Positions 1,952-49,252 of a DNA stretch of 64,000 nt are shown here, in pieces (position 1 is the first letter of the stretch; each line of letters begins with the position of its first letter). The stretch spans positions 42,904,001 through 42,968,000 of the forward strand of contig NC_043010.1 in NCBI RefSeq assembly GCF_006345805.1, in the 5' to 3' direction. The notes below the pieces were generated by a model. It saw only the letters and a program-made list of their open reading frames with translations, was not told the origin of the DNA and did no database searches. Position numbers and translations under genes: made by a program. The DNA is from Octopus sinensis (lineage: Eukaryota).

Positions 1952-3430
1952 ATGAATCATATGATACCATCAAATATTCCTAACTTTGACTTGGTTGATT
2001 CTATTCATGGTGTAGAACGGTCACATAGTTGTGAAATTTGTGGAAAAGGTTTCACTTGTTACGACAACCTTGAGCAACATAAAGGGACACACCAAATGGA
2101 TAAATCTTTTAACTGTGACACATGTGGTAAAGTTTTTAGTCAAGAGTATCATCTAAAACAACATCAAATGGTACACACGAGAGAAAAGCCTTTGAAATGT
2201 AATGTTTGTGGGAGTATCTTTTCTCGTAATGGAGACTTGACACGTCACATGCGAACTCACAGAGTTCCAATAACCACCACTTTCAGCAGTAGTAGTGTTT
2301 CTTGTAACCATCAACATACTGACAAATCTTTTAAATGTCATATATGTGGCTGTATATTTTCTCGAAATGGAAATCTTACACGCCACATGCGAACACATGT
2401 TAACACCACAACTCACTCTCGTATGAGCAATACTACTGTTTACCAACATCATCTCGCTGAGAAGAATTTTAAATGCAGTATCTGTGGCTGTGCTTTTTCT
2501 CGTAAAGGAGATCTAACAAGGCATTTTAGAAGTCATGATGCTGTCATTATTCCAAGAAGTAATGCACCTACAAATGTAAGCAGTATGCAAAAATATCAAA
2601 GTCCTAAAAACCCATTCAATTGTAAGGCTTGCTGGAAGGCTTTCACAGAGCACTCTGATGGTGAAGTACATGAACGTATACATGCGGCACTACTGCCATT
2701 CAAATGTGGAATTTGTGGTAAAGCCTTCCATGATAATAGCACACTTGAACGGCACAGAAGAACACATACAAATGAAAAAATGTTCAGCTGTGATATTTGT
2801 CTGAAGTCTTTTACTCAGAAGTCATCACTAAAGTTGCACAAACGTACTCATACTGGGGAGCGCCCCTTTAAATGCAACATATGTGGTTTTGCATTTTCTC
2901 GAAAAGATCATCTTGAGAGGCATCAGAAAACTAATAATGGTGACAGAAAACTGAGCTGTGTTCCTCAACACCTGCAGCGATCACCACGACAACAACAACA
3001 ACAGGCAATTCAATCACCCCAGAATCAACAATTCATTTCCATTGATATTCATCAGTCTCAGCTGAATGTATCCCAGTCACAAACTTCACAGCAACAATCA
3101 CAAACTCCACAACTCACAAATATATCACCTCAGCAGCAAGATCTACAAAAAAACACACAACATACAAATATGTCATCCCATCAAAACTCACAACACACAG
3201 ATATGCCACAACAATCCATATCACAACCATCTGATATGCCACAAGCTCCACAACATGCAGACCTTCCTCAGTCACAACAAGGTTCACAACATACAGACCT
3301 ACCACCACCTCAAGGTTCACAAGACTCAGATCTGACTCCATCACAACAGCCAAATTCACAAGTTCCAGACATGCCAACACCACAACCAGATTCACAACAC
3401 ACTGATGTACCACATTATATGAACATATGA
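1952..3430 (+). CDS. C2H2 zinc-finger protein ZNF-A (492 aa; 9 fingers, last one lacking the final His; Q-rich C-terminus)
   Basis: Intact ORF with C-x2-C...H-x3-H motifs and TGERP/TNEKM-type linkers; TTCACCATG start context; AG acceptor-like site at 1940-1941; AATAAA at 3837-3842. Confidence 0.95.
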   Translation: MNHMIPSNIPNFDLVDSIHGVERSHSCEICGKGFTCYDNLEQHKGTHQMDKSFNCDTCGKVFSQEYHLKQHQMVHTREKPLKCNVCGSIFSRNGDLTRHMRTHRVPITTTFSSSSVSCNHQHTDKSFKCHICGCIFSRNGNLTRHMRTHVNTTTHSRMSNTTVYQHHLAEKNFKCSICGCAFSRKGDLTRHFRSHDAVIIPRSNAPTNVSSMQKYQSPKNPFNCKACWKAFTEHSDGEVHERIHAALLPFKCGICGKAFHDNSTLERHRRTHTNEKMFSCDICLKSFTQKSSLKLHKRTHTGERPFKCNICGFAFSRKDHLERHQKTNNGDRKLSCVPQHLQRSPRQQQQQAIQSPQNQQFISIDIHQSQLNVSQSQTSQQQSQTPQLTNISPQQQDLQKNTQHTNMSSHQNSQHTDMPQQSISQPSDMPQAPQHADLPQSQQGSQHTDLPPPQGSQDSDLTPSQQPNSQVPDMPTPQPDSQHTDVPHYMNI

Positions 3431-10110: not shown

Positions 10111-11072
10111 TGTTTAACCTTCTCCCTTAACCAATCTGTCGTTCCCTTTTCTCAACCCTACCACCAAGCCTAGTATGTGTACTCAACCAGCACCTCTTAT
10201 ATTAATTCTCTTTGTATCTTGTTTACTCCCCTTTTCCCTTTCTCAATACTGGAGAAATCAACCAACTGACATTTATAATGAGATACATCATGTATGTGTG
10301 CAAAGTGTATGGATGTATATTTGATTAATTTGTACGGCTAATATATACATGCATGTGAGTGTGTTTGTACGTATGTGTGTGTACATGCACATACGCACAC
10401 ATATGTAGCATGTATGTGTATATGTATGTATTTAGGAATGTATATCCATATAAACTCATATGTACGGAGAGTCTCTGTAGCTCTGAGACTGAAACCAGGA
10501 GTAAGGTCCCTTGTGGTGGTCCAGTGTGCTAAACCCTTGGGGCATTGAACTTTCAGCAATTTTATGGACAAAGGCTTTCAACAATTATCAATAACATTTG
10601 AGAGTAAATAAACATAAACATTCAATTAGTTGGATAATTTATTGAAAATTTAAATACATTGATGAGAATTTAATGACTTTATTAATGTAGAATTGAGAAT
10701 CCTCATAACTAAATAGAATAAGTTTTGGAAGCCTTTCTTAACGTAAATGATTTGATGATTTCACTGAAGGCAGTTCTTCCTGCAACCTAGTCTCAATATT
10801 AAACACTACCAGGTCTATCAATCTCCTCACAAAACTTCTAATAGGTTTAGTTTATTGAAAGATCTTTCAACAGATGCAACCATAAATGGAAATATGTAGG
10901 ATGTATCTAATGTTAATGTGGGACCAAAATTTTCACTAAATTTTGATGTGTATATTTTTTTAATACTTATATAATTTTCTTAATAATTTCATCTTGCATG
11001 AATTCCGAGAAATTGAGTATTTGTCCAATAATTTTGTGGATGTAAGGTTGAATTATGCTTCAATATTAGTTT

Positions 11073-19206: not shown

Positions 19207-21759
19207 TTACAAACACATATATTTACTGACAGGAGGATATTCGTCACTTGTGGATGCTGTTGCTGGAGCAATATTGCTTTTATTGTCTTGTGATCGATTA
19301 ACTAATGATCCTGTGTTTACTGCTTCTGTTGAAGTTTCATTACCTTTCTGCAATGTTTGAACATTACCACCACAGTTTTCATTACAGCTACTGCCGATGT
19401 TGTTGCTGTTGTTATTAGAATTATTATTGGAACAAATGTGAGAGGAAATATGTTCAGAATTAGAATGAATAATTTGGATAGGTTGTGATGGTAAAGATGG
19501 TACTTTTATATTATGAGTGCGTTTATGTCTTTGCAAAGCATCTCTACGGGAAAATTGCTTAGGGCAAATCTCGCAGTGATATGGTTTTTCACCAGTATGA
19601 ATTCTTGCATGAATACGCAAATAGTCTCTCTGGGAAAACTGTTTCAGACAAATCTCACAGTGGTAAGGTTTTTCTCCAGTATGTGACCTCCTGTGTACGG
19701 CTAGTGTATTTTTACGTGCAAATCTCTGCCCACAAAATTCACATTCAAATGGACGTTCACCTGTGTGAATACGCTGATGTACAACCAAATAGTCCTTTTG
19801 CACGAACTGCTTGAAGCAAATGTTACATTGATAAGGGCATATCAAAGGCTGATTCTGTTGAACTTGCAAAGTATTTTGTTGTGGGAAATGTTTTGGACTT
19901 TGGCTATGAGAGAAAGGCTTAAAACCAACGTGCGTTTGCCTATGTATCTGCATTGCAGCTTTCTGTGAAAATTGGGCAGAACAAATTTCACATTTGAATG
20001 GCTTATTTCCAGTGTGTGAACGTCTGTGTATTACTAAAGTGTCTTTCCGAGAAAACCGTTTTGGACAAAGATCACAGTGGAATGGTTTTTCCCCAGTGTG
20101 TATACGCTTATGTATGACTAGATAGTCCTTTTGTGCAAACTGCTTGAGACACACCTCACACTGGTATGGTTTCTCACCTGAATGACGTACTCTATGTATT
20201 TTGAGAGTATCTCGACGAGCAAAGCTTTTTGAACAGATGTCACAAACAAATCTCTTGATTTTTACTTTCGTCTGAGGATGATGAGACCTTTGATGAGAAA
20301 GAAGCTTATCTCGTTTTATGAAGTTCATCCCACAGAGAGAACAGCTATATGGCTTTTCAAAGGTGTGCTGAGTACGTCGGTGTATTTGAAGTGTCTCACG
20401 GCGAGAAAATTTCTGAATGCAGAAGTCACACTGAAAAGGTTTCTCACCTGTATGTGTTCTGTAGTGTATTTGAAGCTTATCCTTTTGAGAAAATTGCTGA
20501 AGACACACATCACACTGGAATTTTTTTTCCCCTGTATGTATCTTGCGGTGGATTTGTAACGTACTCTTTCTTGCAAATGATTTTGAACAAAACTCGCATA
20601 CAAATGGTCTCTCACCAGTATGGACACGTCTGTGTATCTGCAAATAGTCCCGTTGTGCAAATTTCTTCCAGCAAATATCACAGCTATGTCTCTGTTTTCT
20701 AGAACTGTGTGGATTATTGCTATGTGTTTGTTTATGACTTTCAAGTTTCTGCCGCTTAGCAAACTGCATCCCACACACATCGCATCTGAAAGAGGTTTCA
20801 CCAGTATGAGTCCTTCGATGAATCTGAAGTGTATCTCGCCGAGCAAATTTCTGAATACAAAAATCACACTGATAGGGCTTTTCCCCAGTATGACTGCGCC
20901 TGTGAATTTTCAGGTAATCTTTTTGAGCAAATGACTGAAGGCATATATCACATTGATATTTTGGTTTATGCTCTTGTGATGATTCCATTTGACAGTGTGA
21001 TTGATAGGGCACTTTGTTGTCCTGTTGTTGGTAGTATATTGTTTGTTGTTGTTGTTGAAATTTAGGCTTTTGTTGATCTTTAACACCGTCATGCTGTTTA
21101 AAATGAGTTTTCTGATGAATTTTCAATGTATCTTTTCTAGAGAACTGTTTTTGACATATTTCACAATGGTAGGGTCTTTCCCCAGTATGTAATCTTTTGT
21201 GTATCTGTAGATAGTCTTTCTGAGCAAATTTTTTTAAGCATATATCACAGTGAAATTGTTTCTCCCCAGTGTGAGTACGCTTGTGGATTCGCAAGGTATC
21301 CCTACGGCCAAAGCTTTTAGAACAAACATCACACTGAAATGGTTTCTCTCCAGTATGAATTCTTCGATGAATCTGCATTAAATATTCCTGAACAAACTCC
21401 TTTCCACAGTAACCACAGAATAGTTGCCTAGGTTTTGTAGTCATGTTAATTTTATTTGCTTCAAGTTGATGTTTCTGATCAACAGTGGCGTCCGAATAGA
21501 ATGACTTTGATGATGAAGACATTGCCAATGATAAGTTGGCTTCTGAAGTAGTCAGTTGAGGTTTTTGGTGACAGTGAGGGCTGGCTTGTTTTGCAGATGA
21601 ATTATTTGTCATAATATCTTCTGATATAGATGATGATTGTGTTGGTGGTTGTTGTGGGGATACATAACATGGTTGACTAGATGGACTGCCATACATATCA
21701 TTAAGTAAAACTGTTTCATTGACCGGAGTTAGTCGAGGTGTTTGAAGACCTGAATCCAA
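19207..21759 (-). CDS. C2H2 zinc-finger protein ZNF-B, 3' segment (20 fingers)
   Basis: 850-codon open frame with 20 C2H2 motifs and TGEKP linkers; begins at TTG rather than ATG, overlapping the end of the upstream ORF; AATAAA on the minus strand at 18919-18924. Confidence 0.95.
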   Translation of the reverse strand: MDSGLQTPRLTPVNETVLLNDMYGSPSSQPCYVSPQQPPTQSSSISEDIMTNNSSAKQASPHCHQKPQLTTSEANLSLAMSSSSKSFYSDATVDQKHQLEANKINMTTKPRQLFCGYCGKEFVQEYLMQIHRRIHTGEKPFQCDVCSKSFGRRDTLRIHKRTHTGEKQFHCDICLKKFAQKDYLQIHKRLHTGERPYHCEICQKQFSRKDTLKIHQKTHFKQHDGVKDQQKPKFQQQQQTIYYQQQDNKVPYQSHCQMESSQEHKPKYQCDICLQSFAQKDYLKIHRRSHTGEKPYQCDFCIQKFARRDTLQIHRRTHTGETSFRCDVCGMQFAKRQKLESHKQTHSNNPHSSRKQRHSCDICWKKFAQRDYLQIHRRVHTGERPFVCEFCSKSFARKSTLQIHRKIHTGEKKFQCDVCLQQFSQKDKLQIHYRTHTGEKPFQCDFCIQKFSRRETLQIHRRTQHTFEKPYSCSLCGMNFIKRDKLLSHQRSHHPQTKVKIKRFVCDICSKSFARRDTLKIHRVRHSGEKPYQCEVCLKQFAQKDYLVIHKRIHTGEKPFHCDLCPKRFSRKDTLVIHRRSHTGNKPFKCEICSAQFSQKAAMQIHRQTHVGFKPFSHSQSPKHFPQQNTLQVQQNQPLICPYQCNICFKQFVQKDYLVVHQRIHTGERPFECEFCGQRFARKNTLAVHRRSHTGEKPYHCEICLKQFSQRDYLRIHARIHTGEKPYHCEICPKQFSRRDALQRHKRTHNIKVPSLPSQPIQIIHSNSEHISSHICSNNNSNNNSNNIGSSCNENCGGNVQTLQKGNETSTEAVNTGSLVNRSQDNKSNIAPATASTSDEYPPVSKYMCL

Positions 21760-22562
21760 GGAAAGTGTTTGCTCGGGACGTTATTATGCATAGATTTTTC
21801 AGCAATATTATTTGATGGAGATGAACAAGAACTTGGCTGTTCATGAGAACTGTTTCTACTGTTGCCTTTGTGGTTTCCATCAGTGTTAGCTGCATTACTA
21901 CTATTTGAATTGTGCTGCATGTGTTTACCAATTCCATGACTAGATCTTGACATTCCTCTATTTTCTTCATTATGGAAGTGCTGACTGCTGGTACTGTTAT
22001 GGATTTGTTTATCTGGCAAATTACTTTGAGAGTTCTGAGAAAAATGTTTCTCAGAAATACTATGTGACATTCTGTGTGATGGATGGGCCACAAGGTTCTG
22101 AACATATTGTTTGCCACCACCATCACTTTGAACATGCTGCCCTTGTTGCATGCTTGACCTCTGAGAAAAATGTTTTCCAGAAACAGATGTATCATTGCTG
22201 TGGATTTGTTTTTCAGCAATATGTGATATTCTCTGTGGAGGTAAGGTGTGTCGTGGTAGAAAATCCTTGGGAAAAAGATCTGAGTGAAACACTGAATCAG
22301 TTATGTATGCCATTCTAGGTGTTTCCAAGCAATGCTTCTGAGGGAATTCCTTACCAAACATATCACAGTGAATAGGGTTTTCTGTTATATAGGTTAGTCT
22401 TGGTGTATCTAATCGCTGAGAGAGATCTCTCCCATAAATGTCACAGTAAATTGGTGTTTGATTGCGCTGGTTTATTCTGTGAGTTGCAATGCTATGTCTA
22501 GGTGAATACTGTTTACTATGAAGACTTCCATGACTGGTTCTGTCACTAACGGATCCATCCAT
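21760..22562 (-). CDS. ZNF-B 5' segment (degenerate finger-like repeats, His/Ser-rich); joins the 3' segment across a 1-nt frameshift (~1118 aa total)
   Basis: ATG at 22562; the repeat motif GKEFPQKHCLETPRMAYITD aligns without gaps to SKHFP|LDSGLQTPRLTPVNE across the junction CAC TTT CC|TTG. Confidence 0.8.
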
Positions 22563-27925: not shown

Positions 27926-30669
27926 TACACACATTCATTCATACATACATACAACATTTTCTATAGAACTGGTGGATAGCATCAAGTTAATGTAAATGTA
28001 ATAGTATATTTTATTGTACATGCAGTTTGTTGTATATATTGCAGAAGTATACAGCATTCAGAATAAATTTAATATTTTAGTGAATATCTAATATTTGAAA
28101 AAAAAAAAAAATATTCATGCCAGGTAGACATATCTGAATACTAGCATACATAAGTAATGCATAATGTCCAACATTTACATGCAGAAAGAGCAGGCAGTGT
28201 TATTCCACTGAACATGTATCACTTACCATACACGACAGCATCGTCAAGAACTACCCTTTATCTTATATGGTGTCTCTTTGGTGCAATATTCTCAGTGTTT
28301 GTATATTAACACACACATCTGTATATGCTAACGTCTACTATGTATGTATATGCTTGTAATATCTATATGTGTTTTCAGAAAAGTGGGAGAGAGAGAGAGA
28401 GAAAGAGAAAGACATAGAGACAAAGGTGGAGAGAGAAGGAGAGAGAGAGAGAGAAAGAGAGAGAGATAGTGTGCGTGTGTGTGTGTGTGAAAAAGATAGA
28501 TACACTCACAGACAGAATGTATGAGTTGGAGTGTTATTCGTGAGTTTTAGTCCCACAGTAACAAACTATATTTCCAACACTGAACATTGTTTTTCAAGAT
28601 AATTTTACATTACAATGACATGCAGACGCTTCTGTTGCAAGACACCCACCCTAATTTCGTTATCCCTCCCCCACTCTGTCTGACTGCTTCTCTCTCCCTC
28701 TCTCATGTGTGTATGTGAATGTGTATGTGTGTGTGTGCGTGTAGATATATATATATATATATATATGTTTGTGCGAATGTGTCTATGTACGTATATGTAT
28801 GTGAACTATATACATATATATATATGTATTTATAAACAAACACATGTAAGCGTACATACATTCACATACACATGTGTATGCATGTACGTATGCATGTGTG
28901 TGTATTTGTGCACATACACACAGACACATACACACACACACACGCCCTTACTCAAGCATCTTTATACTCTATTACATGCACACACGCAACAAGCTATACA
29001 TTATGTTATCACGTAGTCTCTACCTCCTTGATTGTACTGCTGCTACTGCTGTTGTTCTGCCTGTTTGGTTTCCAACTTGATACAGCTGTCTCTGCTATCC
29101 CATTGCAAAAAGCTGGCCTTGTCTCTGGGAACCACATTTCATGTTTAACCCTAGTAAGCAGACACAAAATGGTGTCGTTTTATATATATGCGAATGTTCG
29201 ACTGCTGTTCTAATTGATGGTGGTAGTTATGGTGATGCTGGAGGTTGTAAAGGGTAGAAAACATGTGAGATGGTACCAGCCATTCTTTTTGACTACTGAT
29301 TGGCAATCTTTAAACTCGTTACATATATATATATATATATATATATTTTATTTGCTCGTCTTATTACAAATCCATGTCACACTTGCCGTCGTCATCGACT
29401 TTGACATTCTTATAATGGTAATGATGATGATGAAGATGATGATGATGATGATGAAAATCACTGTTGCTGCTGCCTTCACTGTTGTTATCTTTGAAAACGA
29501 CTTTACAATTTGCCCTTTTACAAGAACCAACCCCCTCAAAAAAACAAAAAAAAACAAAAACAAAACCCCCCAAAAAACAGACAGAAGATTTAAAGAATTA
29601 TTTTGCCAAATTAACTCGTACTGAATGAAGCTTGTATTTTTATACTAAAATCACAACTGACCAGCAAAGTCTCTCTTTCCCCACCCTCGCTCTTGCATAC
29701 ATGTTTTCTATCGATTTCCTGATGGAGTTATCGAAAATGTTGATGGTATTATTTTCTTTTTTAAATCACATGTCAACTCTGATCGAGCAGGTCTATGGTC
29801 AAAGGCTATGACTATCTATGACTATCCAGTCTGCTGGATATATATTATCCGATCTATCCGGTTTATTTTTTTTCATGATTGTAGTGAGACTGGTTGCTAT
29901 TTCTAGCGTATCGAGCGATCTCTTTGAGACTTCCTTGTTGGCTGGTATATTATTATGTTGATTGTAATTACAATAATTTATTGAGGCAGTGCATTTTCAT
30001 AGCTGACCGAGAGAGCATAGCACGAACGACTATGATAAACGATGTCTCTTGATTACGACTATTATTTTTTGTTTGTCAATAAAATGAGTGAGTACCAGTC
30101 AGATATTGGGGTCTGAAAGTAAACATACCTAAGTCAGAATGTTAATACAAAAAAAAAAAGTAGTTTCGACTAAAGAGAGGAAATGAAGGAAGAAGATTAT
30201 GCTGTGATTGTTGATAAGCCTTGGAGTGACCTAATCCAGATGAAATAGCATCTAAATATTCATCAATTTACACCTTACTATCTTGAAAAAACTTATAGAC
30301 CTATTAGATAACGTAGACAATACTAAACAATAGGAAGAAAAAAATCAAGATGGTTATGGATGGAAGGCTTTTGAATGTAGGGTCAGATTAATCATTGACT
30401 GGTGGTGGTGGGTTTAACAATAACGTTCCAACAGTAAACAAGTGTATTTTTTACTTTCTTTTCCAAGCTTCTGTGTAACTAGATGTGATTTACCAAAGAT
30501 GACTCGCATGTTCAAGAGGGTAGCAGGAGATTTGAGGGTTTATTGGATACTAATTATTAGCACGTCCCACGAGAATATAAACTGTTCTCATGCCGGCATG
30601 ATGCAGAGGCTGTTTTCTGCAGTTGACAAGATGGAAAAATATTTTCCAGAGATACATTACCAATATCAA

Positions 30670-30772: not shown

Positions 30773-31196
30773 CTGTGCGTGTGTGTTCACCCAAGAAGCG
30801 ATAAATTATAGGACTCCATACGTAAATGTAGATAGTTCTTTAACAGATTTTAGCTTAAATTTTCAAGAACTTCGAGTTTCGCGTCAGTGATCTTTCAGTT
30901 GACAATCTGTCTGAGACTATTGACTCTTAAAAATCAATGATGCTGGAATATATATTTTCAAATACTTTCATATGACATTTTTTTAATGTATTAAGATAAG
31001 CGTATCTCTAGATAGATTTCATGTATGAAAGTATGTTCAAACATCCGATGATAATTTAAAAGGCAACAGAGTCAGGTCATCAGTTGAAAGAGCGGGGACG
31101 TGAAACGCGGGGTGCTGGCATTATTGAGCGATTTGGTTTATATTTACATGATGCATAAATATCACACACACACATAGGTATATATATGTATATATG

Positions 31197-31275
<79 letters not shown>

Positions 31276-31324
31276 TAATATGTATATATATAGACATACA
31301 TGTATGTATATATGTATATATGTA

Positions 31325-31381
<57 letters not shown>

Positions 31382-31444
31382 GTATGTGTATATATATATA
31401 TACGCATATATATGTATGTATATAGATCGGTAGCCACTACGCAC

Positions 31445-31602
31445 ATTTTTTTCTCGTTTCTTTCTGTGTTCCTTTCTGTGAAAGAGCATAGGCTCGAAAC
31501 GTAAAATACCTTTTCAATTCCTGAGCGTTATACTAATACATCTGTTTGTTTTCTACACCACCTGTCTTTGTCTTTTGCTTTTTTCGTGAATTCTCCACCC
31601 CC
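31445..31602 (+). mobile_element. ~160-bp TA-flanked repeat containing a minimal hammerhead-like fold (Penelope-associated type)
   Basis: Copies at 31445-31602, 33117-33274 and 35975-36123, with a related family at 34705-34875 (-). Confidence 0.65.
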
Positions 31603-31614
31603 TATATATATATA

Positions 31615-31655
<41 letters not shown>

Positions 31656-32022
31656 TGCGTGTGTGTGTGTGTGTGTGTTTGTGTGTGTGTTTGTGTGTGT
31701 AGATACACAGCCGACAGCTGATGAAGGGTCGTTCTTTGTGTTGCTAGTCCTGTTTTCCATTTGTTTATCTCGTTGTTTGCATATTAAACTCATTTGTTTT
31801 CGTATTTCATGTTGTTTACTGTTGGTGACATCCTTTACCCATATATGCATATGTATGTATGTGTATATATATATATATATGTATAATTTATATATATGTA
31901 TACGCACGCACACATATATGCATATACATACATATATGCACTTGTATGCACACGTACACTTTCAAGAAATAGAGTTCTAGGTAATAATATGTACATGTAA
32001 GTAACGATATATGCATATATGA

Positions 32023-32620
32023 AGGCGGCGAGCTGGCAGAATCGTTAGCACGCCGAGCGAAATGCTTAACAGTATTTCGTCTGCTGCTACATTCTGAGTT
32101 CAAATTCCGCCGATGTCGACTTTGCCTTTCATCCTTTCGGGGTCGATTAAATAAGTACCAGTTACACACTGGGGTCGATATAATCGACTTAATCCGTTTG
32201 TCTGTCCTTGTTTGTCCTCTCTGTGTTTAGCCCCTTGTGGGTAGTAAAGAAATAGGTATTTCGTCTGCCGCTACGTTCTGAGTTCAAATTCCGCCGAGGT
32301 CGACTTTGCCTTTCATCCTTTAGGGGGGCGATAAATTAAGTACCAGCTACGCACTGGGGTCGATATAATCGACTTAATCCGTTTGTCTGTCCTTGTTTGT
32401 CCTCTCTGTGTTTAGCCCCTTGTGGGCAGAAAAGAGATAAGTATTTCGTCTGCCGCTACGTTCTGAATACAAATTCCGCCGAAGTCGACTTTGCCTTTCA
32501 TCCTTTAGGGGGTCGATAAATTAAGTACCAGTTGCATACTGGAGTCGATCTTATCGACTGGCCCCCTCCCCCCAAACTTCGGGCCTTGTGCCTAGAGTAG
32601 AAAAGAATATATGCATATAT
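32023..32620 (+). mobile_element. SINE trimer (full copy plus two 5'-truncated units), duplicated at 33711-34300
   Basis: Units restart at GTATTTCGTCTG directly after the AAAGA(A/G)ATA(G/A) tail. Confidence 0.9.
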
Positions 32621-33271
32621 GTAAAAATACATACACATATACATGCATAAAATAATGTACTCAAACAGTGGGTAGAAATGATATAGAGTACGCTTGCATG
32701 AAAATGTTTTAATTTGGGCATAATATGCATATATATTCGCATACACACATACGCATTCATGTATCTACACATATAGTTAGGCATTAATACATAGCTAAAA
32801 AACCAAAAAGACGAATTATATGTAACACACACTTTTCTATATACTTATACACGTACATGCTACATGTACTTATACATATTCGTGTTTTAATTACCGGAAT
32901 TTAATTATTGGGCAAAATCGAGACAGCTGTTAGAGAATATGCTGAACTTTTGCAGTTAATAAATTATATTAATGCTACTTCTCCATTTTCTGAATTTTGA
33001 TATATATATATATATTATATAAAAGGGCTTAGTAAAATAATGTATGTATGTATGTATGTGTATATATATATATACGCATATATATGTATGTATATAGATC
33101 GGTAGCCACTACGCACATTTTTTTCTCGTTTCTTTCTGTGTTCCTTTCTGTGAAAGAGCATAGGCTCGAAACGTAAAATACCTTTTCAATTCCTGAGCGT
33201 TATACTAATACATCTGTTTGTTTTCTACACCACCTGTCTTTGTCTTTTGCTTTTTTCGTGAATTCTCCACC

Positions 33272-33327
<56 letters not shown>

Positions 33328-34892
33328 TATATATATATGTGCGTGCGTGTGTGTGTGTGTGTGTTTGTGTGTGTGTTTGTGTGTGTAGATACACAGCCGA
33401 CAGCTGATGAAGGGTCGTTCTTTGTGTTGCTAGTCCTGTTTTCCATTTGTTTATCTCGTTGTTTGCATATTAAACTCATTTGTTTTCGTATTTCATGTTG
33501 TTTACTGTTGGTGACATCCTTTACCCATATATGCATATGTATGTATGTGTGTATATATATATATATATGTATAATTTATATATATGTATACGCACGCACA
33601 CATATATGCATATACATACATATATGCACTTGTATGCACACGTACACTTTCAAGAAATAGAGTTCTAGGTAATAATATGTACATGTAAGTAACGATATAT
33701 GCATATATGAAGGCGGCGAGCTGGCAGAATCGTTAGCACGCCGAGCGAAATGCTTAACAGTATTTCGTCTGCTGCTACATTCTGAGTTCAAATTCCGCCG
33801 ATGTCGACTTTGCCTTTCATCCTTTCGGGGTCGATTAAATAAGTACCAGTTACACACTGGGGTCGATATAATCGACTAATCCGTTTGTCTGTCCTTGTTT
33901 GTCCTCTCTGTGTTTAGCCCCTTGTGGGTAGTAAAGAAATAGGTATTTCGTCTGCCGCTACGTTCTGAGTTCAAATTCCGCCGAGGTCGACTTTGCCTTT
34001 CATCCTTTAGGGGGGCGATAAATTAAGTACCAGCTACGCACTGGGGTCGATATAATCGACTTAATCCGTTTGTCTGTCCTTGTTTGTCCTCTCTGTGTTT
34101 AGCCCCTTGTGGGCAGAAAAGAGATAAGTATTTCGTCTGCCGCTACGTTCTGAATACAAATTCCGCCGAAGTCGACTTTGCCTTTCATCCTTTAGGGGGT
34201 CGATAAATTAAGTACCAGTTGCATACTGGAGTCGATCTTATCGACTGGCCCCCTCCCCCCAAACTTCGGGCCTTGTGCCTAGAGTAGAAAAGAATATATG
34301 CATATATGTAAAAATACATACACATATACATGCATAAAATAATGTACTCAAACAGTGGGTAGAAATGATATAGAGTACGCTTGCATGAAAATGTTTTAAT
34401 TTGGGCATAATATGCATATATATTCGCATACACACATACGCATTCATGTATCTACACATATAGTTAGGCATTAATACATAGCTAAAAAACCAAAAAGACG
34501 AATTATATGTAACACACACTTTTCTATATACTTATACACGTACATGCTACATGTACTTATACATATTCGTGTTTTAATTACCGGAATTTAATTATTTGGG
34601 CAAAATCGAGACAGCTGTTAGAGAATATGCTGAACTTTTGCAGTTAATAAATTATATTAATGCTACTTCTCCATTTTCTGAATTTTGATATATATATATA
34701 TGAATATGAACAAAGAGAAAACACAACAACGCGAAGACATGGAACAAGTATAGTGTTATTGGACGCTCAGGAAAGGAAAGAAAGAACGAGGATTTAACGT
34801 TTCGAGCGGAGCTCTTCGTCAAAAACATAGAAAAAGGAAAGGTCCAAGGAAGGGAAGACGGAGAAAGAAAATCGCCAACGATACACACGCGG

Positions 34893-34943
<51 letters not shown>

Positions 34944-35811
34944 CACAACACACACACACACATGTATGTATGTATGTATGTATGTATGTATGTATGTATG
35001 TATGTATGTATGTATATATATATATATAAAATATATATAAAAATACAAAATGGAAGAAGAACGCAAAACATTCAAATAGACGACACAAAAAAAACAGTCA
35101 AGAACAGGATCATCCTCGCAATTTCGGCTGATTGGTCATTAAGTAGTTCATATATCCAAAAAGATGCACACTCTAAAACATTAGAGCAGTAGTATTTAGA
35201 AGTTATTTGTTATGGTCACTCTCAGAGTGACCATTGGTTTCGCACCCACAAGGCGCTTTGCTGTACAGGCGACTCGCCAGACTAAAATGACCGGAGGTAC
35301 GTAACCTCTCTAACTCTTTTCACTCAACATCAAGTCTTGCGTGAGAAGGATTTTCTTTAGATTAGTGGCCAAATACTTCACACAGATAGTGATGTTTGTT
35401 TAACAGACACAACTTAAAGAGTCTCTTTCATTTGTATACCTCACGTTAAAAAAAATATTAGTTAAGCACCACTGAACTACAAGCAGAGGCAGGTTGCCCA
35501 TGTAGTGTTAATGAGTGTCCGGTGGATGTAGTGTATGAAGCTGAAGTGGTGACCGGCACTGCTGACTGCAGCAGTGGCGTTGATGATCACAAAAAAAAGC
35601 TCCTTTCGCAAACCAGGCTATAAAACACATAGTAAACCAATGCGAAGTAAACAAATATCTGATAAGCTAGCCTTCTATCATCATACACTAAAATAAATTA
35701 TTTTCGCATGGTTTTGTTTGCGAAACGGCCGTCACACTATGGATTTCAACTGGTGAAATGAACATATCCATCTCATACCTTCTCACTATCTTTATATTCT
35801 ATATATATATA

Positions 35812-35929
35812 CAGGGCCAGCCCCAGGGTTGCTGGTGCCTCGAGCAAGTTGAACTTCGGGGGATTTGTCTTTGTCATGCTCTCCTTGGCGCCCCGGGCGG
35901 CTTCCCGTGTTGCCGGTACCTTGAGCCGC

Positions 35930-35934
<5 letters not shown>
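35812..35934. mobile_element. small hAT-like MITE inserted in (TA)n
   Basis: Imperfect TIRs CAGGGCCAGCCCCAGGG / CCTTGAGCCGCCCCT. Confidence 0.55.
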
Positions 35935-35973
<39 letters not shown>

Positions 35974-36004
35974 TTATTTTCTCTCCTTGTTTCTTTCTGT
36001 GTTC

Positions 36005-36040
36005 CTTTCTGTGGAAGAGCGTAGGCTCGAAACGTTAAAG
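36005..36040 (+). ncRNA. minimal type I hammerhead ribozyme fold (core has one mutation)
   Basis: CTTT-CTGTGGA-A-GAGC(GTAG)GCTC-GAAA-CG-TT-AAAG: stem I CTTT/AAAG, stem II GAGC/GCTC, GAAA, palindromic ACGT stem III. Confidence 0.6.
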
Positions 36041-36120
36041 ACTTTTTCAATTCCGAACGTTATACTAATACATCTGTTTGTTGTCTACACCACCTGTCTT
36101 CGTCTTTTTTTGTGAATTCT

Positions 36121-36156
<36 letters not shown>

Positions 36157-36378
36157 ATTTAGGGTAGCAAAAAATTCAATAGAATTTATCGCTATTTAAT
36201 TTAATTAAGCTAATTTAATCATTAATGACACAGAAACGTTGCAACGTCTAAAAGATGAATTAGGGTAAATGTTTTTAAATTTTCACCTAATTTCTGAATT
36301 ACTACTACTTGGCGGTGTGAGTTATGGCTGCTCTTTCTGGTGGACGAATGACCTGTTAGGGTCACTCCTAAATTGTTA

Positions 36379-36450
<72 letters not shown>

Positions 36451-36743
36451 CATACATACATACATACATACTACATACATACATACATACATACATACAT
36501 ACACACATACATACATACATACATACACGACAGGCTTCTTTCAGTTTTGTCTACCAAATCCATATACAAGGCTTTGGTTGGCCTGAAGCTATAATCGAAG
36601 ACACTCAATGTATCACACAATGGGACTGAACATCGATGAATCATGTGGTTGGGATGCAAACTTCTTACCATGCAGCCACGTACATATATACATAAATGCA
36701 TACAAATGCATGATGACAGATCAATAAAGAGATAGGTATATAT

Positions 36744-36789
<46 letters not shown>

Positions 36790-36795
<6 letters not shown>

Positions 36796-39230
36796 CATTT
36801 CTAAATATGTCAGAGAGATTTATGCAGTAGTGATACGATAAAGTAGTTGTATACTGTCAACTTAATGTGACAGTCCCATGAAGGGAATAATACTACTGCT
36901 ATTTAGCTCTAGGAAGCAGCAACACTTCCTGTCGGCCTTGACACATTTCCTGTGTCCTTATGTTTGCAAGGGGGAGATAAACACCTCCACCCAACGAAGC
37001 CTGCATCCAGAGACTAGTTTCTGAGTCTTTGCTCGTTATCAGTCTGGTGTAGCATGGCCTTATTTCTTTATTATAGGCACAATGGCCTGATTATATAGAA
37101 GGAACAATACAAAATACATGCGGGAACACAAAACGAATAAAAAAATGAGAATGAAATGAATATAAACATTATGTAAATGAGACAGCCACCTTGCCCCGCT
37201 GCGAGACGAACTGTGATTATCTCTACATAGAACTTACTTTCTTAAACTTACAACAAAAACTTTACAAAAAACATTGATTTTTACAACTGTCCTAGCTTCG
37301 CTACAATGCGAAACTGTGTCCTTTTCTTTCATTTTTTGTTCTACAGTTCGTATATGTCCTTTTACGAATTACAGTTTTTCTTTCTTTTTTCTTTTTTTTT
37401 TATAATGTAATTGTCTGTTCATCAATTTTTCATTATTACAATTTATAACGTTCATTTTTCTTTTTTCATTCGTAATTTTTCTACATCTTCCTACTTACCT
37501 TTTTCATCCTTTCCCGTTATGTTTCTCTCCGTTTTTTTTTTTGTTTGTTTTCCTCTATGCTTTTTCCTCCCTTCACCTCCTCGCCGTTCTGGTTCTTCTC
37601 TCCACTGCAACTCCACATTCTGCACTCTCTCATATTCCGGTTCATCTGTATGTCTGTTCGACTGTACTTTTCGTTCTCTCTTTGCGTACCTCTGCTGTAT
37701 CTCTCCTGGTTCCCCTGTTCCGCCTCCTCGTCACTTTGTATCTCTATTTCCTCTTCCGACATCTCTGTTGTTAGCTCTTCCATAACTTTAGTTTCGCGTA
37801 GTGTCTCCTCTTCCTCATTTTTGCTTCTTTTTATCTCTCTTACTATTGGGGATCTTTTCCTTTCCCGCTTTCTGCTTTTTATTCTGTTTTTTTCCTTCTC
37901 CGCCGGTTCCTCGGCCCATTGTCTTTGTTCTTCTGCAATACTTTCCATTACTTCCTTTGCCAATTCCTCGACTGGTTTACAGTCTTTAATTTTATGGCAT
38001 CTCATAATTATGTCTAATCTATCACCTGTTGGTAACTCTATTTTTTCTGGAACTTCTTTGTAATATTCTGGGGTTACAGCTCCGATTATTTCAATGCCGT
38101 ATCCCCAGAAATTTTTACATTCGGTTTTGCTGACTAGTTCTGTTTCCAAATCAAGGCTACCTTTTCGTAGCTTTTCTCTAAAAATGGCCACTATTACCCA
38201 TTCTGGCTCTATCGTTGGGGGCAGTCTTCCCACTATGACTCTTATTAAAGTCTTTCTCGGCGTGCTGGGTAACAGTGATCATTTTCTGCCTACTGTTACT
38301 TGTTTGCTGTTAATTACCATGTCCTCTTCTTTCTCAAAAGTTACCTCTACAGGTTGGGGACAGTCTTCCACTATGACTCTTATAAAGTCTTTCTCGGCGT
38401 GCTGGGTAACAGTGATCTTTTCTGCCTACTGTTACTTGTTTGCTGTTAATACCATGTCCTCTTCTTCTCAAAAGTTACTCTACAGGTTGGGGACAGTCTT
38501 CCCACTATGACTCTTATTAAAGTCTTTCTCGGCGTGCGGGTAACAGTGATCATTTTCTGCCTACTGTTACTGTTTGCTGTTAATTACCATGTCCTCTTCT
38601 TTCTCAAAAGTTACCTCTACAGGTTGGGGACAGTCTTCCCACTATGACTCTTATTAAAGTCTTTCTCGGCGTGCTGGGTAACAGTGATCATTTTCTGCCT
38701 ACTGTTACTTGTTTGCTGTTAATTACCATGTCCTCTTCTTTCTCAAAAGTTACCTCTACAGGTTGGGGACAGTCTTCCCACTATGACTCTTATTAAAGTC
38801 TTTCTCGGCGTGCTGGGTAACAGTGATCATTTTCTGCCTACTGTTACTTGTTTGCTGTTAATTACCATGTCCTCTTCTTTCTCAAAAGTTACCTCTACAG
38901 TTCTGTATTCTTTTCCTTTGTTCATGAACACAATTTTCTCCTCTATACTGCTCAAAATTAGTATCTCAATCTCATTTTCTGGTACTCTCTCTATCGTTCT
39001 GTTTTCATTTGAAAAGGTTCGAAATTTAACTGTTCTTTCTATTTTCTTCTTCTCTTCTTCTGGCATAGCAATTCTTCCTCAAACTTCACCATGTTGCTAT
39101 ATTTTCTTAACTTCTTTATATCCCATTGTATCTGCTGATGCTTCAGCCTTCCTCTGTTCATTGCTTCCTGCATTTCTGCCACTTTAGCATACATTTTCAT
39201 GTCATCCTTTCTCGTTATGCCCAACATGAC
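36790..39230 (-). mobile_element. non-LTR retrotransposon relic with ORF1-like (RRM-like, charged tail) coding region and no visible ORF2
   Basis: Frames RTVEVTFEKEED..VTVGRK*SLLPSTPRKTLIRVIVGRLPPTIEPEW.. resemble LINE ORF1 RRM regions; family not identified. Confidence 0.45.
38214..38901. repeat. ~5 tandem copies of a 139-bp unit
   Basis: CAGTCTTCC(C)ACTATGACTC at 38222, 38361, 38494, 38631 and 38770. Confidence 0.97.

Positions 39231-49207: not shown

Positions 49208-49252
<45 letters not shown>

What the first reader, a model, noticed from the sequence alone, without database searches (positions are those of the whole stretch)
19505..21420. ZNF-B's 20 fingers alternate between two recognition helices, suggesting a reader of 6-bp-periodic DNA
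Seen: helices alternate between type A, Q-[KR]-D-Y-L (fingers 3, 5, 8, 14, 17, 19; 1, 10 and 16 are Q variants), and type B, R-[RK]-[DSEN]-T-L (2, 4, 6, 9, 11, 13, 15, 18; 20 is RRDAL). Position 6 is almost always Ile or Val. Fingers 7 and 12 are K-type and end blocks, and fingers 5-7 and 10-12 are a duplicated triplet. Known: each finger reads ~3 bp, and Q(-1) prefers A while R(-1) prefers G. Inference: an AB dimer reads a 6-bp unit, the geometry needed for a dinucleotide or hexanucleotide microsatellite, in a genome packed with such repeats. (GA)n fits the -1 positions, but T3/Y3 are non-canonical for it, so the target is open. A microsatellite-binding ZNF family in octopus would be a new regulatory layer.
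Basis: partly seen in the sequence, partly recalled or inferred. Interest (0 to 1): 0.72.

Follow-up and report, generated by a model that had tools for sequence, protein, structure and literature searches.

The report
Conserved octopus zinc-finger gene, alternating helices
An octopus gene encodes 20 zinc fingers whose DNA-reading helices alternate between two rare types; a very distant cephalopod relative keeps the pattern almost unchanged, so a short repeated DNA target is plausible but unproven, and it is unlikely to be a simple dinucleotide microsatellite.

Summary
A minus-strand ORF (19207-21759) carries 20 intact C2H2 fingers at 19513-21417. Position -1 reads QRQR|QRK|QRQRK|RQRQ|QRQR. 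No two linked neighbours share the same -1 residue (permutation p about 6e-4).

The alternation is not a recent neutral duplication. Third-codon identity among fingers is about 41% whatever their type. An orthologue in another cephalopod assembly (L003) keeps 71 of 80 base-contact residues, and 20 of 20 at position 3, although synonymous sites are nearly saturated. Contact residues are more conserved than the finger scaffold in three paralogue lineages.

The gene belongs to an uncharacterised, intronless cephalopod family (relatives are named ZNF45-like, ZNF431 and ZNF28). The family has a decayed-finger N-terminus and a shared C-terminal motif. Only the window-type gene alternates this strictly.

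A periodic target is a reasonable inference but is untested. Published rules (Tyr3 prefers A; R-x-D-T-L modules read xCG) predict 5'-NCG-NAA-3', not (GA)n. Each block spans only 9-15 bp. The window holds no such repeat.

In this assembly a 1-nt frameshift separates the N-terminal ORF from the fingers.

Verdict: a new member of a known kind, of moderate interest.

The parts
19207..21759 (-). Finger ORF, 850 codons plus stop. The first in-frame ATG is at 21696. The ORF holds all 20 fingers and a C-terminal tail ending ...DEYPPVSKYMCL.
   Evidence: the same 829-aa product from the first ATG is called on GCA_006345805.1 CM016872.1
21103..21417 (-). Block 1, fingers 1-4: QEYLMQI, RRDTLRI, QKDYLQI, RKDTLKI
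20722..20952 (-). Block 2, fingers 5-7: QKDYLKI, RRDTLQI, KRQKLES (the K-type finger ends the block)
20278..20682 (-). Block 3, fingers 8-12: QRDYLQI, RKSTLQI, QKDKLQI, RRETLQI (H-x4-H), KRDKLLS (H-x4-H). Fingers 10-12 are the old duplicate of fingers 5-7.
19930..20244 (-). Block 4, fingers 13-16: RRDTLKI, QKDYLVI, RKDTLVI, QKAAMQI
19834..19929 (-). Spacer that contains a decayed finger (FSHSQSPKHFPQQNTLQVQQNQ). All four zinc ligands are lost. The L003 orthologue has an intact finger here (CNLCPRQFTQRNALQAHLRTH).
19513..19827 (-). Block 5, fingers 17-20: QKDYLVV, RKNTLAV, QRDYLRI, RRDALQR
21729..22562 (-). N-terminal ORF (277 codons plus stop, ATG at 22562, in-frame stop just upstream). It is a decayed finger array with the motif PIYxD[IM]YG[KR]..QR, homologous to the N-termini of the family's uninterrupted proteins.
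   Evidence: a profile of these N-termini matches >3000 ordinary ZNF arrays; no Pfam domain
21752..21764 (-). Site of a net 1-nt shortfall relative to L003. The window reads KHFP in the N-terminal frame and then LDSGLQTP in the finger frame; L003 reads KHFPPGSGLQTP in one frame. The shortfall puts the two ORFs in different frames.

Best explanation
SHOWN. This is an old, intronless cephalopod poly-C2H2 gene on Octopus sinensis chromosome record CM016872.1. Its 20 canonical, TGEKP-linked fingers carry two rare helix types in alternation: A = Q-[KR]-D-Y-L-x-I and B = R-[RK]-D-T-L-x-I. Lys3-type fingers cap two of the blocks. The base-contact residues are the most strongly conserved part of the protein between very distant species. 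The alternation is therefore maintained by purifying selection and is not a by-product of recent duplication.

INFERRED. The protein is a sequence-specific DNA binder. Within each block of 3-5 fingers, every A-B pair reads about 6 bp. Many fingers keep the same contact residues, so the preferred sites should contain the same two triplets repeated: one and a half to two and a half copies of a hexamer per block, and five such blocks per protein. Published residue-base rules put that unit at about 5'-N-C-G-N-A-A-3'. B reads xCG through Arg-1/Asp2/Thr3. A reads xAA through Gln-1/Tyr3. Ile/Val at position 6 adds little specificity.

The long non-canonical spacers would reset register or let the blocks bind neighbouring copies. 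The protein should then favour short tandem or clustered copies of a CpG-containing hexamer or dodecamer rather than a dinucleotide microsatellite.
For: - Fingers, helices, linkers and blocks. Pfam zf-C2H2 and zf-H2C2_2 score far above their cut-offs.
- Non-random alternation.
- Rarity of both helix types.
- Old fingers: third-codon identity is 0.41 for same-type and different-type pairs, and the same helix residues use varied codons.
- Orthologue L003 (ENA ERZ21867824) matches finger for finger.
- Identity between window and L003: contact positions (-1, 2, 3, 6) 71/80 = 0.89, scaffold 0.64, non-finger 0.48; Fisher p = 1e-5 for contact against scaffold. Synonymous sites are near saturation.
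- The same ordering holds in two paralogue lineages: 0.98 against 0.73-0.86, and 0.82-1.00 against 0.59-0.92.
- Residue-base rules: Tyr3 prefers A (PMC3668361); RNDTLTE = CCG (PMC7317221); RTDTLRD = ACG (PMC12196555); fingers bind antiparallel, 3 bp each (PMC4330361).
- Engineering precedent: an 11-finger array with repeated helices binds poly(CAG) and needs longer linkers at intervals to work (PMC5013590).
Against: - There are no binding data and no quantitative predictor. The rules for Tyr3, Thr3 and Ile6 come from few natural or engineered fingers in other contexts.
- Strict A/B typing covers 14 of 20 fingers. Paralogues with the same helix classes do not alternate strictly, so the alternation itself may not be the selected feature.
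- Outside the helix, A and B fingers do not form separate groups (scaffold identity 0.389 against 0.376, p = 0.22), so the duplication history cannot be read.
- No (YGNAA)x3 match in the 64-kb window (0 found, 0.15 expected). No excess of CGNAANCGNAA with one mismatch allowed (29 found, 22 +/- 5 expected). The window is far too small for this to count as a test.
- In this assembly a 1-nt frameshift separates the N-terminal ORF from the fingers.
- No protein more than 50% identical came back from the protein database, so expression of an intact product in O. sinensis is unverified.
Confidence: 0.4

Rival explanations
1. This is a conserved transcription factor with ordinary, non-periodic composite sites. 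The alternation is a relic of ancient two-finger-unit duplications. Each finger, or only a subset of them, is now held by selection for contacts in unique conserved target sites, and the similar helices simply give low-information, degenerate recognition.
For: - Paralogues keep the helix classes without strict alternation.
- The array is broken into short blocks.
- Ile/Val at position 6 cannot hydrogen-bond bases, so each finger carries little information.
- In B1H surveys the recovered motif length plateaus after about three fingers (PMC3668361).
Against: - After duplication, fingers that read unique sites would be expected to diverge in their contact residues. Here six fingers keep Q.DY and eight keep R..T (five of them RDT-I), across synonymous saturation.
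- No two linked neighbours are of the same type.
Confidence: 0.3
2. One reading: a reader of a dinucleotide microsatellite such as (GA)n.
For: - Arg at -1 (G) and Gln at -1 (A) alternate every 3 bp. (GA)n is the only dinucleotide repeat that satisfies this.
- The window is rich in microsatellites.
- GA-repeat and CA-repeat binding ZNFs exist: CLAMP (PMC4945028) and Zscan4 (PMC7083622).
Against: - (GA)n needs a middle A under the B finger and a middle G under the A finger. Thr3 in R-x-D-T-L modules goes with C, and Tyr3 goes with A.
- Position 6 is Ile/Val, not the Arg/Lys expected for a 5' G.
- Most arrays in the window are TA, CA/TG or ATAC. Only two are GA (28387-28466 and 49211-49249).
Confidence: 0.05
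3. The conserved helices serve a non-DNA ligand. The array would bind RNA, or mediate protein-protein contacts or oligomerisation through its Tyr3 and Ile6 surface.
For: - Hydrophobic or aromatic residues sit at two of the four canonical contact positions in most fingers, and they are rare in other arrays.
- C2H2 fingers can mediate dimerisation (PMC12774644, listed) or bind RNA (PMC5100589, listed).
Against: - All 15 within-block linkers are TGEKP-like, and the B fingers carry the classical Arg-1/Asp2 pair. Both are hallmarks of DNA-binding arrays (established knowledge).
- Tyr3 has a documented base preference.
Confidence: 0.12
4. In Octopus sinensis the locus is a recently disabled gene (pseudogene), so the pattern is a fossil with no present function in this species.
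For: - A net 1-nt shortfall at 21752-21764 puts the N-terminal ORF and the finger ORF in different frames.
- No protein more than 50% identical came back from the protein database, although other O. sinensis proteins are in it.
- One finger has already decayed (19834-19929).
Against: - 850 codons remain open in AT-rich DNA, with all 80 zinc ligands intact.
- L003 has a different 1-nt shift, in a GGGAAAA run, which looks like a long-read assembly error.
- The paralogues are uninterrupted single ORFs.
Confidence: 0.1

Closest known systems
Paralogues in the same cephalopod family: 'zinc finger protein 45-like' (O. sinensis XP_029644614.1, O. vulgaris CAI9733419.1, Argonauta hians GAB1604159.1), 'zinc finger protein 28' (O. 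bimaculoides XP_014771526.1) and 'zinc finger protein 431' (O. bimaculoides XP_014771537.1)
   Same: - Intronless CDS.
- N-terminal decayed-finger region with the motif PIYxDxYGK.
- The same rare helix classes (Q..YL..I, R.DTL..I, [QK].DKL).
- A shared motif at the extreme C-terminus (P.V..Y[LM]W.L-like).
- Contact residues more conserved than the scaffold.

   Different: - They have 13-15 fingers against 20-21.
- Their alternation is only partial, with runs of A-type fingers.
- Identity to the window protein is 41-50%.
- The names are automatic and none has a studied function.
Natural ZNFs that bind simple tandem repeats: Drosophila CLAMP on GA repeats (PMC4945028), mouse Zscan4 on (CA)n/(TG)n (PMC7083622), human ZNF524 and ZBTB10 on the 6-bp telomeric repeat (PMC10716145, PMC9958480)
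   Same: C2H2 arrays whose sites are short tandem units. ZNF524 and ZBTB10 read a hexamer repeat.
   Different: - They use few fingers (about 2-7) with differing helices.
- No alternating two-helix grammar is reported for them.
- Binding is shown for them and not for this protein.
- There is no homology beyond the generic finger fold.
Engineered poly(CAG)-binding arrays (ZF11xHunt / ZF-KOX1; PMC5013590)
   Same: Long arrays built from repeated recognition helices read a periodic DNA. They need longer linkers at intervals to stay in register. Here, blocks of 3-5 fingers are separated by long spacers.
   Different: These arrays are synthetic, use one helix type for a 3-bp period, and have designed linkers after every second finger.
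Two-finger higher-order periodicity in poly-ZNF proteins such as Xenopus Xfin (recalled from memory: Ruiz i Altaba et al., EMBO J 1987; not checked here)
   Same: Alternate fingers resemble each other more than neighbours do.
   Different: In Xfin-type cases the periodicity is read as duplication history. Here, conservation of the contact residues across synonymous saturation shows selection. A few unrelated arrays in the comparison set also show a period-2 signal (P0156, P0139, P0149).
Lineage-specific cephalopod C2H2 expansions (PMC12513265; Albertin et al. 2015, as cited in PMC10547256)
   Same: It is a cephalopod poly-C2H2 gene. The binding sites of this gene class are described as an open question.
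   Different: This gene is old and its contact residues are frozen. It is not a member of a young tandem expansion with diversifying helices.

Membership tests
Krueppel-type C2H2 poly-zinc-finger proteins | Tandem C-x2-4-C-x12-H-x3-5-H units with the conserved Phe and Leu core | tested here: met
   20 units at 19513-21417. Pfam zf-C2H2 scores 281.8 bits (cut-off 25.2) and zf-H2C2_2 scores 380.7 bits (cut-off 40).
Krueppel-type C2H2 poly-zinc-finger proteins | TGEKP-type H/C linkers between adjacent fingers | tested here: met
   All 15 within-block linkers are 5 residues long and TGEKP-like.
ZNFs with a known N-terminal effector domain (KRAB, SCAN, BTB, ZAD) | A recognisable effector domain N-terminal to the array | tested here: not met
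   No Pfam family matches the N-terminal ORF or the first 112 residues of the finger ORF. The N-terminus is a decayed finger array.
Cephalopod Q..YL / R.DTL family (ZNF45-like, ZNF431, ZNF28) | N-terminal decayed-finger motif, shared rare helix classes, shared C-terminal motif, and an intronless CDS | tested here: met
   - N-terminal alignment and tblastn of relatives' N-termini onto 21867-22499.
- Helix classes.
- C-termini.
- Single-ORF paralogues.
- The window's own CDS is interrupted by one 1-nt frameshift.
Young, lineage-specific ZNF expansions of the transposon arms-race type | Recent paralogues with base-contact residues that diversify faster than the scaffold | tested here: not met
   Contact residues are 0.82-1.00 identical against 0.59-0.92 for the scaffold in seven orthologue pairs. 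Synonymous sites are saturated against L003.
Tandem-repeat (microsatellite, telomere or satellite) binding ZNFs | Demonstrated preferential binding to a tandem repeat | not testable with these tools
Tandem-repeat (microsatellite, telomere or satellite) binding ZNFs | Helix periodicity commensurate with a repeat unit | tested here: met
   Period-2 alternation gives a 6-bp unit. It runs for only 3-5 fingers per block.
Tandem-repeat (microsatellite, telomere or satellite) binding ZNFs | Contact residues compatible with the proposed repeat (GA)n | tested here: not met
   Only the -1 positions fit. Thr3 goes with C, Tyr3 goes with A, and position 6 is Ile/Val.

The most novel reading that the evidence does not exclude
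The window-type gene, and perhaps its family, is a dedicated and anciently conserved 'repeat reader'. Five blocks of alternating A/B fingers would each grip one or two copies of a CpG-containing hexamer (about NCGNAA). The protein would then bind multivalently to tandem or clustered copies, such as a satellite or a periodic regulatory array. It could organise or mark that DNA, possibly in a methylation-sensitive way, across coleoid cephalopods.
Probability: 0.18. Interest if true: 0.65.

Novelty: new member of a known kind. Interest (0 to 1): 0.45.

Why it matters
A 2025 study calls the DNA targets of cephalopod C2H2 proteins an open question (PMC12513265). This gene is a tractable entry point for three reasons:
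- It is old.
- Its contact residues are frozen.
- Its helix grammar is simple enough to give a concrete prediction: a 6-bp unit near NCG-NAA, read in blocks of 9-15 bp. One DAP-seq or HT-SELEX experiment can test that.

If the prediction holds, it would show a natural use of the repeated-helix, interrupted-linker design that engineers reached independently for reading tandem repeats. If it fails, the gene is still a clear case of a poly-ZNF whose contact residues evolve more slowly than its scaffold. That is the opposite of the arms-race pattern usually assumed for expanded ZNF families.

Tried and rejected
1. A full-length protein search was swamped by long vertebrate ZNFs. Only five true relatives were in the top 120, and no orthologue.
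2. Searches with the N-terminal ORF and with residues 1-140 of the finger ORF gave one useful hit (P0121, which led to L003) and one generic hit.
3. Exact look-up of the window's two products found neither in the collection.
4. A profile of the family N-termini searched against 1.84 billion representatives mostly hit ordinary finger arrays. That showed the N-terminus is a decayed array. It added only P0126, P0128 and P0143 to the family.
5. A PDB sequence search with an ABAB block returned only generic finger structures (ZNF568, Aart, CTCF). None carried these helices, so there was no structural precedent for the Tyr3 or Ile6 contacts.
6. Scans of the window for the predicted periodic unit showed no enrichment. 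64 kb is too little sequence to test the idea.
7. Nei-Gojobori dS could not be computed because synonymous sites are saturated. It was replaced by 4-fold and 2-fold site identities.
8. Scaffold-only comparison failed to separate A fingers from B fingers, so an ancestral AB unit cannot be shown or excluded.
9. The telomeric TTAGGG repeat was considered by reasoning alone. Only the phase TTA-GGG fits the -1 contacts, and Thr3 and Ile6 of the B finger do not suit GG. It was rejected.
10. An intron was considered as the cause of the frame change. The only nearby GT...AG pair spans 39 nt, a multiple of 3 and very short, so it was rejected in favour of a 1-nt indel.
11. The species behind ERZ21867824 and the Logan runs could not be identified with these tools.
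Full report
WHAT IS THERE.

A mechanical scan for C-x2-4-C-x12-H-x3-5-H finds exactly 20 fingers in it, at 19513-21417. The only other fingers in the 64-kb window are eight unrelated ones on the plus strand at 2030-2851. Pfam zf-C2H2 and zf-H2C2_2 score far above their cut-offs, and no other domain type is present.

Along the protein, position -1 reads Q R Q R | Q R K | Q R Q R K | R Q R Q | Q R Q R. The bars mark non-canonical spacers of 48, 11, 9 and 32 residues. All 15 links inside blocks are 5-residue TGEKP-like linkers. Position 6 is Ile or Val in 17 of 20 fingers.

IS IT MORE THAN CHANCE?

- Thirteen of the 15 linked neighbour pairs are Q/R hetero-pairs (permutation p = 1.3e-4).
- No linked neighbours share the -1 residue (p = 6e-4).
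- With strict types (A = Q..Y, six fingers; B = R..T, eight fingers), 8 of 15 pairs are A/B (p = 0.005) and none is AA or BB (p = 0.012).
- Both helix types are rare. Asp2 occurs at 2.1%, Tyr3 at 4.1% and Ile/Val6 at 16.6%.
- Measured as identity of contact residues at lag 2 minus lag 1, the window protein ranks 9th of 255 arrays. Five of the eight above it are members of one cluster of a related protein. Three unrelated arrays also show a period-2 signal, so the phenomenon is not unique.

IS IT RECENT DUPLICATION?

No.
- Third-codon identity between fingers is 0.41 for A-A, B-B and A-B pairs alike.
- The conserved helix residues are written with many synonymous codons: Arg as CGT, CGG, CGC and AGA; Thr as ACA, ACC, ACG and ACT; Leu with all six codons.
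- The closest pair of fingers, 6 and 11, shares 80% nucleotide identity.

ORTHOLOGUE AND SELECTION.

The window's ORF is called on GCA_006345805.1, record CM016872.1. The same record encodes a protein that NCBI names as Octopus sinensis, so the window comes from that species.

A search with the upstream ORF found one protein (P0121). On its contig (ENA ERZ21867824, locus L003) a 21-finger gene lies immediately downstream. Its helices match the window's finger for finger. The K-type caps, the two H-x4-H fingers and both copies of the triplet are all present.

Between the two genes, 4-fold sites are 38% identical against 29.5% expected from base composition, and 2-fold codons are the same in 52% of cases. 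Synonymous change is therefore close to saturation. Amino-acid identity by class is as follows:
- zinc ligands: 1.00
- contact positions (-1, 2, 3, 6): 0.89 (position 3: 20 of 20; position -1: 19 of 20)
- the rest of the finger: 0.64
- outside the fingers: 0.48
- contact against scaffold: Fisher p = 1e-5

Non-finger identity of 0.48 is lower than the 0.72 seen between Octopus and Argonauta in a paralogue. The L003 species is therefore more distant from Octopus than Argonauta is. Its name could not be determined.

THE FAMILY.

Relatives share the same rare helix classes, plus a third class with Lys at position 3 ([QK].DKL). They share three further features:
- an N-terminal region of decayed, ligand-less finger-like repeats (PIYxD[IM]YG[KR]..QR);
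- a short motif at the extreme C-terminus (window PPVSKYMCL; others P.V..Y[LM]W.L);
- an intronless CDS.

At least five lineages exist:
- the window type, with 20-21 fingers;
- the 'ZNF431' type, with 13 fingers (O. bimaculoides XP_014771537.1, P0103, P0066);
- the 'ZNF45-like/ZNF28' type, with 15 fingers (O. sinensis, O. vulgaris, O. bimaculoides, Argonauta hians, P0042);
- P0128, with 10 fingers;
- P0143, with 11 fingers.

P0103 comes from the same assembly as L003, so these lineages are paralogues and not orthologues. The O. sinensis ZNF45-like gene lies on the same chromosome record, about 18 Mb away.

In every lineage tested the contact residues are more conserved than the scaffold. Strict alternation, however, is a property of the window type only. 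The others read, for example, xB|ABx|AABcAxAB or AxAAxBcAABc|xABc.

Outside the helix, A and B fingers are no more alike within a type than between types (0.389 against 0.376, p = 0.22). Two columns are exceptions:
- the residue after the second Cys is Leu in A fingers;
- the residue before the last His is Ile, Leu or Val in A fingers and Thr or Ser in B fingers.

WHAT WOULD IT READ?

Fingers bind antiparallel, three bases each (PMC4330361). Arg at -1 with Asp at 2 specifies a 3' G, and Gln at -1 specifies a 3' A (established code; PMC3668361).

For the middle base:
- a Drosophila B1H survey reports that Tyr at position 3 prefers adenine (PMC3668361);
- two widely used engineered modules with the B-type core R-x-D-T-L read CCG (RNDTLTE; PMC7317221) and ACG (RTDTLRD; PMC12196555).

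An A-B pair would then read 5'-N-C-G-N-A-A-3'. This is a lead and not a measurement.

It does, however, contradict (GA)n, the only dinucleotide repeat compatible with G and A at the -1 contacts. (GA)n needs a middle A under the B finger and a middle G under the A finger. The window is rich in microsatellites, but they are mostly TA, CA/TG and ATAC, and only two are GA arrays. The predicted unit is not enriched in the window, which is uninformative at 64 kb.

HOW IT MOST LIKELY WORKS.

Three things are shown:
- a canonical DNA-type array;
- two rare helix types in alternation;
- contact residues frozen over a very long time.

The rest is inferred. Many fingers keep identical contacts instead of diverging after duplication, so the sites probably contain the same two triplets repeated. 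Each block of 3-5 fingers would cover one and a half to two and a half copies of a hexamer. The long spacers would reset register or let blocks reach neighbouring copies. The synthetic 11-finger poly(CAG) binder uses this logic and needs longer linkers at intervals (PMC5013590).

I put this at about 0.4. The main rival, at 0.3, is an ordinary conserved factor with non-periodic composite sites in which the alternation is a retained relic. A non-DNA ligand (0.12), a recently disabled gene in this species (0.1) and a (GA)n reader (0.05) follow.

GENE STRUCTURE CAVEAT.

Upstream, 21729-22562 (minus strand) is a 277-codon ORF. It is homologous to the N-termini of the family's uninterrupted proteins. 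Its frame differs from that of the finger ORF.

At 21752-21764 the window is one nucleotide shorter than L003. The window reads KHFP in the N-terminal frame and then LDSGLQTP in the finger frame, where L003 reads KHFPPGSGLQTP in one frame. L003 has its own 1-nt shift, in a GGGAAAA run further upstream.

The paralogues are single ORFs. The 850-codon finger ORF is fully open with all 80 ligands intact. An assembly indel is therefore the likeliest cause, but a real and recent frameshift is not excluded. No protein more than 50% identical to this product came back from the database, although other O. sinensis proteins are in it.

COMPARISON WITH WHAT IS KNOWN.

ZNFs that bind simple repeats are established: CLAMP on GA repeats, Zscan4 on CA/TG repeats, and ZNF524 and ZBTB10 on telomeric hexamers. 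Two-finger periodicity in long arrays was noted long ago for Xfin (from memory, not checked). What this locus adds is a natural array whose alternating contact residues are demonstrably under long-term purifying selection, in a clade where ZNF targets are unknown (PMC12513265).

It is a new member of a known kind. The periodic-target idea is a good hypothesis that can be tested directly, but it is not a finding.

Noticed in passing
window 21729-22562 (-): The N-terminal ORF is a decayed zinc-finger array: about 28-residue repeats such as PIHCDMFGKEFPQKHCLETPRM that lack zinc ligands. Its motifs are conserved across the paralogues. A profile of these N-termini matches more than 3000 ordinary ZNF arrays. 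It could be an interaction region derived from fingers.
   Followed up: partly
window 21752-21764 (-); L003 about 10560-10640: A 1-nt frame change separates the N-terminal ORF from the finger ORF. The orthologue in L003 has a different 1-nt shift, in a GGGAAAA run. The paralogues are uninterrupted. The cause is either an assembly indel or a recent frameshift.
   Followed up: partly
window 19834-19929 (-): The spacer between fingers 16 and 17 holds a finger that has lost all four zinc ligands (FSHSQSPKHFPQQNTLQVQQNQ). The same finger is intact in L003 (QRNALQA helix). Its loss splits a 9-finger block into two blocks of four.
   Followed up: yes
window 19210-19245 (-): All family members share a motif at the extreme C-terminus (window DEYPPVSKYMCL; relatives FPSVTNYLWHTI, SPMNNYLWQL, TPVNNYLWLL). 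It may be a short linear motif for a partner protein.
   Followed up: no
window 2030-2851 (+): A second, unrelated finger array ('ZNF-A') has 8 fingers. Three consecutive fingers carry near-identical helices: RNGDLTR, RNGNLTR, RKGDLTR.
   Followed up: no
window 38214-38900: A tandem repeat of a 139-bp unit, 5 copies, 96% matches.
   Followed up: no
window 31179-36800: A 185-bp unit repeated 2.6 times occurs twice, at 32071-32559 and 33759-34246. The same flanking TA, TG and GTTCCTTTCTGT arrays recur about 1.69 kb apart. This suggests a tandem segmental duplication of a SINE-like, microsatellite-rich unit.
   Followed up: no
L005 (O. sinensis CM016872.1, 61.09 Mb) and window gene (42.92 Mb): The ZNF45-like paralogue lies on the same chromosome record as the window gene, about 18 Mb away. 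In O. bimaculoides the ZNF28 and ZNF431 paralogues share one chromosome record and have close accession numbers.
   Followed up: partly
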